Under the pieces are notes generated by a model. That model searched no databases and was not told the origin of the DNA. It saw nothing but the letters and a program-made list of their open reading frames with translations. The translations under genes were made by a program, and so were the position numbers. Shown here piece by piece: positions 10,344 through 15,100 of a stretch of DNA of 64,000 bases (position 1 is its first letter; the number at the start of each line of letters is the position of its first letter). This DNA is from Guillardia theta CCMP2712. Its lineage: Eukaryota > Protista > Cryptophyta. The stretch is from contig NW_005434657.1 of assembly GCF_000315625.1 (NCBI RefSeq), forward strand, positions 83,539-147,538, in the 5' to 3' direction.

Positions 10344-10524
10344 NNNNNNNNNNNNNNNNNNNNNNNNNNNNNNNNNNNNNNNNNNNNNNNNNNNNNNNNN
10401 NNNNNNNNNNNNNNNNNNNNNNNNNNNNNNNNNNNNNNNNNNNTCCCCTCCCTCCCTCCCTCCCTCCCTCCCTCCCTCCCTCCCTCCCTCCCTCCCGTCT
10501 TCCCTCCCCTTTCTCAAGTTCCAG

Positions 10525-12084
10525 CAGACTCCTGGGCAGCACCTGGAGGAGCTTTCGATCGTCTTGCTCAGCTCATCGAACGCGCAGTGGAAGTTAGCTC
10601 TTCCCCAGCTGTCGTCGTGTCCATGTCCATGGGGGGACCTTTCTTTGCGCTCTTCTGCTCACAGCACGTCTCAGAGGTCTTGACTGCTCTCCTCCCCTCC
10701 ACTCCTCCCTGCCCGCACTTCCTTGTCCTCTATCATCTCCTTCATACATGGCTACTCCACCCCACACTTCTCTCTTCCTCCTTCCCTCCCTTCTCTCTTT
10801 CTCCTTCCTCAGGTGGCCCCTCCATCGCTGCTTCATCTCATTTCCCAGCAGGCTTGGAAACTTCGGCACATTCAAACGTTCGTGTCAGTCTCTGGGGTGC
10901 GGCAGGACCTTTCTTACTTCCTCCCTCCTCACCTTCTCCGCAGGTTTACGGCGGCTCCTCGTCCCCGCTGCTCACTCTCTTCTCCGGCAAGTGGGGCTCG
11001 CTGATCCCGAGCATCCTTCAGCCCTTCAGCCTCAAGACGGTCGGGAGGGGGAGGGCATTTTGATCTCTCCTCTCACTTCACCTCTCCTCTCTCCTCTCTT
11101 CCCTCAGGCCCGAACGTTTGCAAGTCTCCCTTGGCTGCTTCCTTCCGACCGAGTCTTCAGCAGCGATCGGGTTAGATTTCGTTGAAACCACCTCAAGAGC
11201 TCACCAACACCTTCTCTTCCTCCCCCTCACCCCTCCCTTCTCACCCTCGTCCTCATCCCCTCATCCTCATCCCCCTCGCCGTCCTCCCGCAGGTTTGGAT
11301 ACGCACCAAGTCAAGAAACTTCACCGCATCTGAGCTTCCCGAGGCTCTCGAGCTAGCAGGAGCGTACTTCTCCGCAAACCGAACGGTCGAGTGAGCATGG
11401 GTAAGAAGCGACTTGACATCCTTCAACAGCGAGCATTCGCATCCCTCGCAGGTCAAGCGCTCGCGCCAAACGTGAGTAGAGGAGAGGAGGAGGAGGAGGA
11501 GGAGAAGCAGCAGCAGCAGCAGCAGCAGTAGGAGGCTGAACAGTCGAGCAGGTGACGACTTTCTGCTTTTTTGGAGCAAAACTTCCGACAATCGAAGCGC
11601 TTGAATGGAACGAGGAGGAGCTGAGAAGCCCTCCTGACTCCGCCAGCATGGGCATGGGGGATGGGACGGTGGGCAAGAGGACGAGGCCGGATGGTGACTG
11701 AGCAAGAGGCAGGTACTGGCTGAAAGCCTCTCAGCTTGCATGGAGTGGGCGAAAGTTCAACGAATGCCAGTGAAGAACGTGACTTGGTGAAGACTATCTT
11801 GTACCTCTATCCTCTATCTCCCTCCCTTCCTCCCTCCCTCCCTCCCTCCCTCCCTCCCTCCTTGCCCCAACATTCCAACACCTCCTCCGTCCATCTCTTG
11901 CTTCTCTCCCTCCCTTCCCGCATACCTTTTTATCCCCCTCATCCCTTTTTCACTCTCATTTGTCTGCACCTTTGTCTTCTTCCTGCTCTTGATTCTGACT
12001 TCTATCAGGGACTACGTGGCTCACACAGATATGCTCAAGTGGCCGCCAGTCTTCAAGAAATTCTTTGAGATACTCGTGGGGTGA
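10525..12084 (+). CDS. Lecithin:cholesterol acyltransferase / group XV phospholipase A2 family alpha/beta hydrolase (5' part missing in gap)
   Basis: Nucleophile elbow VVVSMSMGG; WKLRHIQTFVSVSG|VYGGS; FASLPWLLPS; APNVTTFCFFG; catalytic Asp GDGTV; catalytic His AHTDML; stop TGA at 12082-12084. Confidence 0.85.
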
Positions 12085-12140
12085 AACAAACACAATCTCC
12101 TCGCTCGAGGAAGCCACTCACAAACTTATCCCTCCCGGCT

Positions 12141-15100
12141 TCAAGTCGCCTCGCTCTTTCCTGGGAGGAAGTCGGAGTCCTTAGGAAGCTGCTTGCCCTC
12201 GTTGAACTCGGCGACGACCCACACGCTGGCCCCATCCTGAAAGCACGTCCTGTACTTGATGGAAGAACGGGAGTCCTTGGAGAGCAGCTTGTTGAGGCGC
12301 TGCTTGAGAACTGGTACGGGGACACCTGACTTCTCGATCTTCTTGAGGTTCAGCTTCTTCACCATGTACAAGACTCCGTCATTCTTGTGCTTCATAGAGA
12401 AAGTCTTGCCCAAGGAAGTTTCCTCAAGGACCGCGGACGAGCTGCTTTCCGGTCAAAAACATCGCGTGCATACAAGGTGGTTACCTGTCCTCGGGGTCGG
12501 GATGATACTCTAGTGAATCAAGAGAAGCAGACAGCTGATGTGGTTTCAACCACTCGGCAGTCTTGTCCATGAGGTGCAAAGCAGCTTCTGACTTGCGCTT
12601 CTTGGCGGCTGCGAGGTCTACAGACGTCATGTCATGCCACAAGAAGGCAAGCTGCTTGCTCTTGTTCGAGCCAGCGCTAGATCGGATGGAGATTTGCAAT
12701 TGGCAATTCACAGCATTGCGTTCCTCGGCAGACAGCTTGAGGGCGGTGGAAGTTCTCAGGAGAGAAGTCTGGATCTCTTTCGCAACAAGGCCTGAGTTGT
12801 CCTCATCCCCCAAAGCAAGAGCAGATTTCATGGAAGCTTGCACAGAGGCAAAGACGTCAGACTTCATCAATTGAGCGATATCCTTGCCCTCGATGTCCTT
12901 CTTTTGACAGTCAAGCAACTTTGTCAATGCCTCGTTGCAAGAGATCACAGTGCCATCTTGGACAATTGCCATCGGGCCATCTACAGCCTCGAGAACAACA
13001 CCGTCGTCTTTCCTTCCCGAACCAACAACAGCATTGACAACGGAAGCAAAAGCCTTGGCAGCGCGAAGGTCACTGCTATTCCAGGCCACGCACGTGGCCT
13101 CGACCTTCTCGGCAAATGGAGTGTAGTCGTGTCTTGGATGCATAGTACCCATTGGCTCATTCCAAATAGCCTTGACTTTGGGGTTGCCAGCCCAACTGAC
13201 CGTGTGCAAGTTCTCAGGGCGGAAGAGAAGGATCATGCTGCTTTCCAGAATTGGGATGCAAATGCAGCCAGCTGCCTTTCGAAGTGAGTTGCTGTCTAGA
13301 TCAGGAATAATGTCCCGTAGCGAGTTAAAGGCCTGTAAGATATTAATTGGCACGTTCGAGTCTCCATATGAGAGTAATACCTGCACTTGTCTTTCTGAGG
13401 ACTGTGCAAATCGCTTCTTCAAAGCCTCAACGATCTTGAAGATTGAATCCTGTGAAGGGAGATCTCCGATGGTCATGAGCTCATTCTGATGATAAATCGC
13501 AGAGCCTAGCCTTGACGTCAAATTGAACCCAACTTCAAAGAATGTACCTTGAAGATCCTCTACAATGTCAGAAACATTTGGGATACCTTCAACCAGTCCT
13601 GCAAGCTTTCCATCGCACATCTTCTTGAAAAGTTGATCGAAAATACTGAAGATTCTTTGGTATTCCATGTGAGATTTCTTCTCATGAACCTTGAGGAGCT
13701 CCAATGTGTAGGCATCGGTCAAGGCAGAGACGGCAACTCTCATCTGAATTGAAGGATGCTTAGCTTGCAAGCTGTGCCCTACCAGCATAGCGTGGAAAGT
13801 GTCCTTTAGGACGATTGGATACGTAATGGAGCTACGCATTCCCCACGCCTATGTATGAGTTAGGCAGTTCCTGAATCGATGGTTCACTGACCCCAAGCTG
13901 CTCCAAATAGCAGCGATGTGATGCTCGGAGAAGGGAAGCACCAAGATTGATATGTTCTCGCTCCAAGTTTGGATCGTTCTGAAGCAATGGCTACTCAGAT
14001 ATGGAAACGGTTTTCTTCATCGGAACATCAGAACAAGACACACGGACTTACGGAAATGATTTTGGCCGGATTCGCTCCTGCGTCATTCACGGTGCTGAAT
14101 CGGATTTTCAAGAACCGCATTCGAACACTTGGGCTCAGGATTTCCTAAACCGCATTTTTAGATCCAGCTCACAAGCACCCAAGAAGTACTTCAGGCCACC
14201 GAAGTCCTTGCCATGAATCTTTGACCACCTTGACCTGTAAAACAATTAATACAATAAAGAAGGTTTCAAGCATTCATTACCCTCCTTTCAGCCTCGACCA
14301 TGGAAGTGCCATCTTCGTAGAAATTGCCCACAAACATGCGATCATAACCCATGATTTTGAAGGCATCCCAGCACAACTGGAAACATACATCCTGATCACA
14401 AACGAGTAGGCAAGAATGATTGATAGATCATACTTGTTGACTCAATTCCAATGGAGTGTGACAGAGGTCTAGGTTCTTGATCGCCACACGAACTTTTGCG
14501 TTGGTCTCAACAAAATCATCACAAGGGTCCAATTCCTCCTGAAAAAATTGAACAAAGAGTCACGCAAAATCTGCAAGGATTTCTTTGCAAAACTTACGAT
14601 GTCTGCAACAAAACCGAACGAGCTTTTGGACAAAACCATATTGACCATCATGCATTGTCCGGGATTAGCTGAAATTGCATATATTATGATTCAAAGAAAG
14701 TTTCAACTTTCTCACCAGAATGCGCGACGGAAAGGGTCACAGGATTTACCAATTGCCCAATTCCATTCAACGAATTGACGGAACTCTCGATACGATGTTT
14801 TTCTTCAAACAAATCCAGAAACGATTTTCCCCTAAAGCACCAATGAGACAAGAAAACGCTCTTTCAAAACCTCTATACAAGAGATCCTGCGCCTTCGCCG
14901 GGAAAAGAATTTCTGCATTTTCACTGCAGGCCTTGATCTTCAGAGAGCCATCGTCATGAAGCAAGAAAAAGACTCCATGAGGCTGAACTGCTCCTGCATA
15001 ATCAAGAACCCTACAGAACAGGAAAAGATCTTCATCAAAGAATATTACAATTCAGTCTGTCCTCCACCTGCAATATTCGTGGATTTGCATGGTAGAAGGG

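What the first reader, a model, noticed from the sequence alone, without database searches (positions are those of the whole stretch)
12141..12990. Phytochrome output module is one PAS plus only the N-lobe of a eukaryotic Ser/Thr kinase
Seen: after a single PAS domain, the last exon encodes VLEETSLGKTF (degenerate Gly loop), LYMVKKL (VAIK Lys kept), an alphaC-like helix and IKYRTCFQDGASVWVVAEF (NEK/CAMK-like beta4-5 and hinge). It then stops at 12141 with no HRD, DFG or APE, and the convergent LCAT gene ends 56 bp further on, leaving no room for a C-lobe. No histidine kinase or receiver domain is present. Established: cryptophytes are reported to have phytochrome-eukaryotic kinase hybrids (PEK). 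Inference: this copy cannot phosphorylate and may act as an interaction or dominant-negative module, or complement a separate C-lobe or partner kinase in trans.
Basis: partly seen in the sequence, partly recalled or inferred. Interest (0 to 1): 0.75.

Follow-up and report, generated by a model that had tools for sequence, protein, structure and literature searches.

The report
Phytochrome ending in half a kinase
A phytochrome-family gene of the alga Guillardia theta really does end after only the small (N-terminal) lobe of a protein kinase, and the same cut-off protein is kept almost unchanged in the related alga Hanusia phi, so it is a conserved non-catalytic remnant and not an annotation error or a dying gene.

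Summary
The gene is Guillardia theta CCMP2712 GUITHDRAFT_104500 (821 aa, minus strand).

- **Gene end.** After PAS2-GAF-PHY and one PAS there is a 43-nt intron (12484..12442). A last exon (12441..12144, stop at 12143..12141) encodes kinase strands b1-b5 plus helix C and nothing more.
- **Homology.** The exon matches the N-lobe of a complete phytochrome-kinase-RING (PEK) paralog on contig C31 (E 4e-10) and NEK1 (PDB, E 9e-4). It is predicted to fold as a canonical N-lobe (TM 0.73 to Aurora A and others).
- **No C-lobe.** No C-lobe sequence lies anywhere in the 64-kb window. A convergent gene's stop codon lies 56 nt away.
- **Conservation.** The transcript-derived Hanusia phi ortholog (851 aa) ends at the same residue. 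Its tail has 8 differences in 99 residues, against 26 in 135 for the PAS domain. A 97%-identical environmental relative has the same stop.
- **Order of events.** The nearest outgroup protein (926 aa) carries a longer but already dead kinase (HGN, DLG, no APE). Decay therefore came before truncation.
- **ATP site.** It has also decayed: two glycines of the Gly loop are lost, VAIK Ala is Met, and helix-C Glu is Arg. A split kinase rebuilt in trans is therefore unlikely.
- **Function.** It most likely works by protein contacts. This is untested.

A neighbouring note of this scan on the same gene (s1-443932) reached a compatible reading.

The parts
12790..12996 (-). Core of the single PAS domain that follows PHY
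   Evidence: Pfam PAS/PAS_9 on residues 282-350 of the 452-aa exon translation. The same domain is at 552-620 of P0151.
12487..12513 (-). PEK-specific linker motif LEYHPDPED just before the kinase
   Evidence: It aligns with FEYFPDKED, FSFHPNKDD and FEFMPNKED of other PEK proteins. Only 3 of the 42 linker residues (681-722) differ from Hanusia.
12442..12484 (-). 43-nt intron (GTAA..CAG)
   Evidence: Read from the sequence. It is needed to keep the frame, and the public model P0151 uses the same junction, PEDSSSAV. Introns of the C31 paralog have a similar size.
12144..12441 (-). Last coding exon: kinase N-lobe only (b1-b2-b3, helices B and C, b4-b5, then about 20 poorly ordered residues)
12405..12425 (-). 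Degenerate Gly-rich loop ETSLGK (only the third Gly kept)
   Evidence: Alignment with GEGAFGK of active PEK kinases. P0004 shares the same loss (EDKVGK).
12357..12359 (-). Retained b3 lysine (YMVK; the preceding VAIK Ala is Met)
   Evidence: Alignment. The Met is Ile in the environmental relative and Glu in P0004.
12279..12317 (-). Helix C; the conserved Glu is replaced by Arg (LKQRLNKLL against LKREVQMLL)
   Evidence: AlphaFold helix at exon residues 42-54 and the alignment.
12207..12254 (-). Strands b4-b5 and the hinge Glu (IKYRTCFQDGASVWVVAEF)
   Evidence: Strands at exon residues 63-69 and 72-78 and the alignment.
12141..12143 (-). Stop codon TGA, at the position where helix E of a kinase would begin
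   Evidence: Hanusia P0157 and P0154/P0155/P0156 have the same last residue. P0004 continues past the aligned 'EAT' into helix E.
12085..12140 (.). 56-nt spacer between the two convergent stop codons
12009..12084 (+). Last exon of the convergent gene (..DYVAHTDMLKWPPVFKKFFEILVG, stop 12082..12084); LCAT-like on weak evidence
   Evidence: Open frame and CAG acceptor. Pfam LCAT E 0.008 on the exon at 10500-10760. The Ser/Asp/His motif order was read. Not confirmed.

Best explanation
This is a duplicated member of the cryptophyte phytochrome-kinase (PEK) family whose kinase first lost its catalytic residues and was then cut back to the N-lobe. The resulting protein (PAS2-GAF-PHY-PAS-N-lobe) cannot bind ATP productively or phosphorylate anything. 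Selection nevertheless keeps it in the Guillardia/Hanusia lineage.

Shown here:
- the gene structure and its stop codon;
- homology of the last exon to the PEK kinase N-lobe;
- absence of any C-lobe nearby;
- decay of the ATP-site residues;
- conservation of the tail and of its end point in a second genus;
- a predicted N-lobe fold.

Inferred: the retained N-lobe, together with the highly conserved linker before it, works as a folded protein-contact module. The most likely partner is the kinase domain, or the dimer partner, of a full-length PEK or a related NEK-like kinase. In that case the protein would modulate or compete with active PEK signalling without signalling by phosphorylation itself.
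For: - **Gene model.** My model and the public model agree.
- **Homology.** The paralog on C31 is a complete PEK with HRD, DFG, SPE and a RING. It matches the last exon only over b1-b5.
- **No C-lobe.** Nothing is found in the 64-kb window with C-lobes of four relatives. The nearest kinase hit on the contig, 39 kb away, is a complete NEK-like kinase with its own N-lobe.
- **Hanusia ortholog.** P0157 is 83% identical overall and 92% over residues 690-821, and ends at the same residue.
- **Tail differences.** There are 8 in 99 residues, against 26 in 135 in PAS (Fisher p 0.023) and 75 in 646 in the rest of the protein (p 0.39).
- **Other sources.** An environmental relative, an MMETSP open reading frame and a Logan contig show the same C-terminus.
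- **Tree.** On the photosensory part, (P0004,(G. theta, Hanusia)) has 100% SH-aLRT support and is sister to the PEK-RING clade.
- **Order of events.** P0004 has a dead but longer kinase (Pkinase profile 11-152; HGN, DLG, no APE). It shares the 3-residue insert and the Gly-loop loss with this gene.
- **Fold.** AlphaFold gives pLDDT 80.8 for the exon alone and the same strand and helix pattern in the whole protein. Foldseek hits are kinase N-lobes.
- **Surface change.** The helix C-b4 loop, which packs on the C-lobe in kinases (my knowledge), is hydrophobic in P0004 and the PEKs (HPGVV, SAYIV) and polar here (SRSSI).
- **Precedent.** An IRAK3 splice form lacking the pseudokinase C-lobe is reported to be signalling-active (PMC7955167).
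Against: - No partner, interaction or phenotype was tested, so the contact-module role is inference.
- Guillardia and Hanusia are close relatives (branch lengths 0.03 and 0.05). Without nucleotide data, dN/dS could not be computed, so conservation is argued only relative to other parts of the same protein.
- The AlphaFold alignment contained full kinases, which biases the model toward a kinase fold.
- The last 16-20 residues are predicted to be disordered.
- No full-length cDNA of G. theta itself was seen. The MMETSP open reading frame covers only the last exon.
Confidence: 0.6

Rival explanations
1. Vestigial stub. The N-lobe has no function of its own. It persists because it caps or stabilises the preceding PAS and linker, or because too little time has passed for it to decay. 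Whatever the protein does is done by its PAS2-GAF-PHY-PAS part.
For: The catalytic machinery is gone. Guillardia and Hanusia are close relatives, so limited divergence is expected anyway. The tail is not significantly more conserved than the protein as a whole (p 0.39). The last 16-20 residues are predicted to be disordered.
Against: The tail is significantly better conserved than the PAS domain of the same protein (8/99 against 26/135). It has no indel or frame change in three independent lineages, and the stop position is identical. Over the longer distance to P0004 and to the PEK-RING proteins, the N-lobe is among the best conserved segments: 38% and 37% identity, against 19% and 13% for PAS. 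The polar replacements in the helix C-b4 loop look like adaptation to life without a C-lobe.
Confidence: 0.27
2. Split kinase. The N-lobe pairs in trans with a separately encoded C-lobe, or with a partner kinase's C-lobe, to rebuild an active, light-regulated kinase.
For: The b3 lysine and the hinge Glu are retained. The N-lobe is conserved and predicted to fold.
Against: The first two Gly-loop glycines are lost, the VAIK Ala is Met (Ile or Glu in relatives), the helix-C Glu is Arg and the gatekeeper Met is Ala. These are features of a site that no longer binds ATP. The sister protein P0004 was already catalytically dead while it still had a C-lobe. Genome searches with PEK and P0004 kinase parts returned kinases with their own N-lobes, and no PEK-like orphan C-lobe. 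That search was not exhaustive.
Confidence: 0.04
3. Artefact. The gene model or the assembly is wrong, and further exons supply the C-lobe, for example beyond the convergent gene or in an unassembled gap.
For: The scaffold has N runs, the nearest at 10344..10443. The public model does contain at least one probable error, an in-frame intron read as coding. No full-length G. theta cDNA was seen.
Against: The transcript-derived Hanusia protein ends at the same residue. Two environmental contigs, a Logan contig and an MMETSP open reading frame all end with the same residues. There is no GT donor between b5 and the stop. No C-lobe similarity exists anywhere in the 64 kb. Only 56 nt separate the stop from the convergent coding exon.
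Confidence: 0.04

Closest known systems
Cryptophyte PEK (phytochrome-eukaryotic kinase hybrids; Duanmu et al. 2014 as cited in Li et al. 2015, PMC4525182). Examples here: the G. theta paralog on contig C31, and P0005 and P0007.
   Same: PAS2-GAF-PHY photosensory part, a single PAS, the conserved F/L-E-Y/F-x-P-D/N-K/P-E/D linker, then an NEK/CAMK-like kinase N-lobe. The photosensory part sits in the same cryptophyte clade.
   Different: The kinase stops at the boundary of helices D and E. HRD, DFG, APE, the rest of the C-lobe, the RING and the long C-terminal extension are all absent. The ATP-site residues are degenerate.
P0004 / P0152 (926 aa, MMETSP Transcript_58918; a cryptophyte transcript of unnamed species)
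   Same: It is the closest relative outside Guillardia/Hanusia (29% identity; clade support 100). It shares the 3-residue insert before b1 and the loss of the first two Gly-loop glycines. It has no RING.
   Different: It still has a shortened C-lobe (HGN in place of HRD, DLG in place of DFG, activation segment and APE deleted, subdomain XI kept). It is therefore a bilobal pseudokinase, whereas the window gene keeps the N-lobe only.
IRAK3 splice variant lacking the C-lobe of its pseudokinase domain (Rothschild et al. 2017, as described in PMC7955167)
   Same: A signalling protein in which a pseudokinase N-lobe remains without the C-lobe, and the protein is still reported to be active through interactions.
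   Different: It is an animal death-domain protein and a splice or knock-out product, not a fixed gene architecture. There is no sequence relationship beyond the kinase fold.
KIND domain (a non-catalytic module derived from the kinase C-lobe; from my own knowledge, not checked here)
   Same: Half of a kinase fold kept as a non-catalytic interaction module.
   Different: KIND is the opposite half (the C-lobe) and is an established domain family. I found no named family for an N-lobe-only module (searches gave none).

Membership tests
PEK (phytochrome-eukaryotic kinase hybrid) | N-terminal PAS-GAF-PHY photosensory module of the cryptophyte phytochrome clade | tested here: met
   Pfam PAS_2 E 1.1e-8 and PHY E 1.4e-21. 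GAF is not reported by Pfam, but the region aligns to the GAF of relatives. The tree places the protein as sister to the PEK-RING proteins.
PEK (phytochrome-eukaryotic kinase hybrid) | A single PAS between PHY and the kinase | tested here: met
   One PAS/PAS_9 hit at residues 552-620, with no second PAS.
PEK (phytochrome-eukaryotic kinase hybrid) | A complete C-terminal Ser/Thr kinase domain | tested here: not met
   Pkinase scores 15.1 bits against a cut-off of 31.7 and covers only profile positions 11-85 of 263. It is not listed for the whole protein at E 0.01 or below. The protein ends at the start of helix E.
PEK (phytochrome-eukaryotic kinase hybrid) | C-terminal RING finger (present in many PEKs, not all) | tested here: not met
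   No RING in P0151. RING is present in P0005 and in the C31 paralog.
Catalytically competent eukaryotic protein kinase | Gly-rich loop GxGxxG | tested here: not met
   ETSLGK aligned to GEGAFGK.
Catalytically competent eukaryotic protein kinase | b3 Lys paired with the helix-C Glu | tested here: not met
   The Lys is kept (YMVK), but the Glu position holds Arg (LKQRL against LKREV).
Catalytically competent eukaryotic protein kinase | HRD catalytic loop, DFG and APE in a C-lobe | tested here: not met
   The protein stops before them. None is found elsewhere in the window.
Protein kinase fold (N-lobe) | Five-stranded sheet plus helix C, in the order b1-b2-b3-aC-b4-b5 | tested here: met
   This rests on prediction only. 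AlphaFold gives pLDDT 80.8 and the same elements in the whole-protein model. Foldseek matches Aurora A, MST2, PAK1, AMPK and NEK7 N-lobes at TMq about 0.7.
Bilobal pseudokinase | Complete two-lobe fold with inactive residues | tested here: not met
   Only the N-lobe is encoded. The sister protein P0004 does meet this feature.
Histidine-kinase-type phytochrome | HisKA/HATPase output, with or without a receiver | tested here: not met
   No such Pfam domain in P0151. The G. theta loci on C49 and C66 do have this output.

The most novel reading that the evidence does not exclude
The N-lobe-only tail is a selected, stand-alone signalling module. It docks on the kinase domain of the full-length PEK-RING proteins, or of a related NEK-like kinase, through an N-lobe to N-lobe or helix-C interface. 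In this way it switches their activity allosterically or blocks it. That would make this the first natural 'half-kinase' regulator attached to a phytochrome-type sensor.
Probability: 0.25. Interest if true: 0.75.

Novelty: new variant of a known kind. Interest (0 to 1): 0.55.

Why it matters
PEK proteins are known only from sequence. A 2026 review states that nothing is yet known about the light sensing of cryptophyte phytochromes (PMC13150293).

This gene is a natural dissection of the PEK output. It shows a stepwise series, from active kinase plus RING, to a bilobal dead kinase, to an N-lobe only, and the last form is conserved in two genera.

For kinase biology, it is a rare case in which a kinase N-lobe appears to persist by itself as a folded, constrained domain. 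That gives a simple test system for what an N-lobe can do without a C-lobe.

For algal photobiology, it points to a non-phosphorylating relative that may modulate the true PEK photoreceptors.

The gene itself is already in public annotation. It is probably one of the three G. theta 'PEK' entries listed by Li et al. 2015, which limits the novelty to the architecture and its conservation.

Tried and rejected
**Searches that gave nothing or could not be run**
I could not fetch the ENA, Logan or MMETSP contigs, so there is no dN/dS and no view of the 3' UTR.
- The search for related loci in JGI metagenomes with the 97% relative found nothing.
- Duanmu et al. 2014, Rockwell et al. 2014 and Rockwell & Lagarias 2020 are not held. 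I could not check whether the truncation was already described.
- The word-index search with the P0004 kinase part found only P0004 itself.
- Literature searches for a named N-lobe-only domain found none.

**Leads followed and rejected**
- A stretch two stops downstream in the same frame (..SISKNFLKT.., about 12070..12044) resembles P0004's helix E (SIAKQLLKT). I reject it as chance for three reasons. It is antisense to the convergent gene's last coding exon. No GT donor lies between b5 and the stop. tblastn with three C-lobes does not report it at E 20 or below.
- Candidate 'missing C-lobes' elsewhere turned out to be complete kinases with their own N-lobes. C17 at 55.9 kb is a complete NEK-like kinase. 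C12 at 148 kb is a complete stand-alone kinase.

**The neighbour's label**
- I could not confirm that the neighbouring gene is LCAT beyond a weak Pfam exon hit. The genome-wide LCAT profile search, a PDB search and tblastn with the G. theta C27 LCAT homolog did not support it. This does not affect the main result.

**Handling of spliced models**
The paralog's exons were searched separately, and the spliced window protein was used only as the database entry P0151.
Full report
**Where and what.** The window is G000:C17:83539-147538 of an 87.1-Mb, 669-contig assembly. The gene is Guillardia theta CCMP2712 GUITHDRAFT_104500 (EKX49539.1 / XP_005836519.1; P0151, 821 aa), found by exact cluster look-up. 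It lies on the minus strand.

The large exon ending at 12485 encodes PHY (Pfam E 4e-22) and one PAS. A 43-nt GTAA..CAG intron (12484..12442) joins it in frame to a last exon (12441..12144), which is followed by TGA at 12143..12141. The public protein has the same junction (..PEDSSSAVLEE..) and the same C-terminus (..FLPGKSEAT). Introns of 45-55 nt are normal in the paralog.

**Is the last exon a kinase N-lobe?**
- Pfam alone is marginal. Pkinase scores E 0.015 and 15.1 bits, below the 31.7 cut-off, but the match is colinear with profile positions 11-85 of 263.
- A genome-wide six-frame search with the exon finds a paralog on contig C31 at E 4.3e-10 and 38% identity. That locus is a complete phytochrome-PAS-kinase-RING gene with LHRDLKPDN, VTDFG, SPE and a C3HC4 RING.
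- NEK1 (4apc) matches at E 9.4e-4 over its residues 33-112. The paralog's kinase is closest to GCN2/PKR, CDPK1 and NEK7/NEK1.
- AlphaFold on the exon, with a 9-row alignment, gives mean pLDDT 80.8 and pTM 0.70. The order of elements is b1, b2, b3, a short helix, helix C, b4, b5.
- Foldseek against the PDB returns only kinase N-lobes (Aurora A, MST2, PAK1, AMPK, NEK7, PKA). TMq is about 0.73 and rmsd 1.1-1.6 A over 77-80 residues.
- A whole-protein model gives the same elements at residues 722-801, with pLDDT 61-83 and a disordered last 16 residues.
- One caveat applies. The alignments contained full kinases, so the fold prediction is not independent of the homology.

**Is the C-lobe really missing?**
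- Aligned with four PEK relatives, the tail runs from the PEK linker (LEYHPDPED) through b5 and the hinge to 'EAT'. This aligns with the first residues of helix E (EER, DDR, and EAT in P0004), and there the protein stops.
- tblastn of the C-lobe exons of the C31 paralog, searched exon by exon, finds nothing in the 64-kb window. The same holds for the C-lobes of P0004, P0005 and P0007. The best E is 0.5, whereas the N-lobe query hits 12434..12204 at 1.2e-12.
- No GT dinucleotide lies between b5 and the stop. Four codons after the TGA there is a TAA.
- On the plus strand a convergent exon (about 12009..12084) ends with TGA at 12082..12084, leaving 56 nt between the stops.
Other checks did not confirm it. 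This does not matter for the main point.
- The only kinase hits elsewhere on the contig are far away. The nearest, 39 kb off, is a complete NEK-like kinase with its own N-lobe.

**Is the truncation conserved?**
- A word search with residues 690-821 of P0151 finds P0157 from Hanusia phi (EukProt; 851 aa; no Pkinase among its precomputed Pfam domains).
- P0157 is 83% identical overall and ends at exactly the same residue..FLPGKSQAT against ..FLPGKSEAT.
- Differences between the two species are 8 of 99 in the last exon, 3 of 42 in the linker, 26 of 135 in PAS, 30 of 204 in PHY and 9 of 200 in GAF. Tail against PAS gives Fisher p 0.023. Tail against the rest of the protein gives p 0.39.
- The tail is therefore as constrained as the protein as a whole and more constrained than its PAS domain.
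- A 97%-identical relative on an ENA metagenome contig (P0001 and P0155) ends with the same residues. So do a second ENA contig (P0154), a Logan contig (P0156) and an MMETSP open reading frame identical to G. theta (P0153). Only two substitutions occur in the exon.
dN/dS is therefore not available.

**How did it arise?**
- The full-library search with the PHY-PAS exon finds few close relatives. P0004 (926 aa, an MMETSP transcript marked as a complete ORF) is the nearest at 29% identity, ahead of the PEK-RING protein P0005 at 23%.
- On the photosensory part alone, (P0004,(G. theta, Hanusia)) is a clade with 100% SH-aLRT support. It is sister (86%) to the PEK-RING clade of P0005, P0007, P0026, P0002 and P0003.
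- P0004 has a kinase domain covering only Pkinase profile positions 11-152. It has HGN for HRD and DLG for DFG. The activation segment with APE is deleted, and subdomain XI is kept.
- P0004 shares two derived features with the window gene: a 3-residue insert before b1, and loss of the first two glycines of GxGxxG.
- The most economical order of events is as follows. The PEK gene duplicated. One copy lost its catalytic residues and its RING. In the Guillardia/Hanusia lineage, everything from helix E onward was then lost.
- The long stem branch (0.86) followed by very short tips (0.03 and 0.05) fits a burst of change followed by constraint.

**State of the retained N-lobe.**
- The b3 Lys and the hinge Glu are kept.
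- The VAIK Ala is Met here, Ile in the ENA relative and Glu in P0004.
- The helix-C Glu is Arg, and the gatekeeper Met is Ala.
- The helix C-b4 loop is hydrophobic in P0004 and in the active PEKs (HPGVV, SAYIV) but polar here (SRSSI). In kinases this loop packs on the C-lobe (my knowledge), so I read the change as adaptation of a newly exposed surface. This is inference.

**Most likely working.**
- Shown: the protein cannot be a kinase, a histidine kinase or a response regulator.
- In my alignment it also lacks the Asp of the DIP motif (WPEEILSP) and the His next to the retained chromophore Cys (HRCY) (positions read). This agrees with the scan's neighbouring note on the same gene (s1-443932).
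- Inferred: the whole protein is a derived, non-enzymatic relative of the PEK photoreceptors. Its conserved linker and N-lobe serve as a contact surface. The simplest idea is that it pairs with full-length PEK-RING proteins or related kinases and modulates or competes with them. The scan noted two PEK-RING genes elsewhere in this genome, and Li et al. 2015 list three G. theta PEKs.
- Precedents exist for half-kinase or pseudokinase regulators. One is the IRAK3 form lacking its C-lobe. Another, from my knowledge, is the C-lobe-derived KIND module.
- I give this reading 0.6. A functionless but tolerated stub gets 0.27. A split kinase and an artefact get about 0.04 each.

**Novelty.** PEKs are published (PMC4525182), and this gene is in public annotation. 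I found no description of an N-lobe-only PEK or of its conservation, but the key PEK papers were not readable here. I class it as a new variant of a known kind.

Noticed in passing
window 13333..13380 (minus strand): A 48-nt in-frame GT..AG stretch (VLLSYGDSNVPINILQ in the public model) is absent from the transcript-derived Hanusia protein. It carries 4 of the 11 true amino-acid differences to the 97% relative P0001. It has pLDDT below 50 in the whole-protein model. It is probably an intron that the public gene model reads as coding.
   Followed up: partly
P0004 / P0152 (MMETSP Transcript_58918 and Transcript_30720): A cryptophyte PEK relative has a bilobal but dead kinase (HGN for HRD, DLG for DFG, activation segment and APE deleted) and no RING. 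It is an intermediate between the active PEKs and the N-lobe-only form. Its species was not identified.
   Followed up: partly
window about 13950..14330 (GAF exons); P0151 residues 206-211 and 259-262: The DIP motif is EIL (the Asp is lost), and the His after the chromophore Cys is Tyr (HRCY). Yet GAF is the best conserved domain between G. theta and Hanusia (95.5%). This agrees with the scan's note s1-443932.
   Followed up: partly
P0151 residues 546-680 (window about 13014..12610): The PAS domain is the fastest-evolving part of the protein. It has 26 of 135 differences to Hanusia. All 7 substitutions to the 97% relative that lie outside the intron-like stretch fall inside it, not counting the terminal S722R read-through artefact.
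   Followed up: no
L016 7664..9265 (G000:C12, about 147.7-149.3 kb): A stand-alone 534-aa open frame holds a complete kinase that is the closest genomic relative of the PEK kinase (50% identity over hinge to b7). It is followed by a Cys/His-rich C-terminal region of unknown type. It is a candidate partner or donor of the PEK kinase.
   Followed up: no
window 10344..10443, 10446..10470 and 11832..11856: A 100-N assembly gap lies inside the convergent plus-strand gene. Identical (CCCT)n low-complexity runs sit in its introns. The gene's LCAT assignment is only weakly supported.
   Followed up: partly
P0151 residues 31-60 and 361-390 against P0157: Local drops to 50-60% identity, with indels between the G. 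theta model and the Hanusia protein, suggest further mis-modelled exon boundaries at the N-terminus and in the PHY region of one or both models.
   Followed up: no
L022 (G000:C66:396500-406499) and L012 (G000:C49): Two further G. theta phytochrome loci have PAS-PAS-HisKA-type outputs. The C66 copy is very divergent (branch length 1.8).
   Followed up: no
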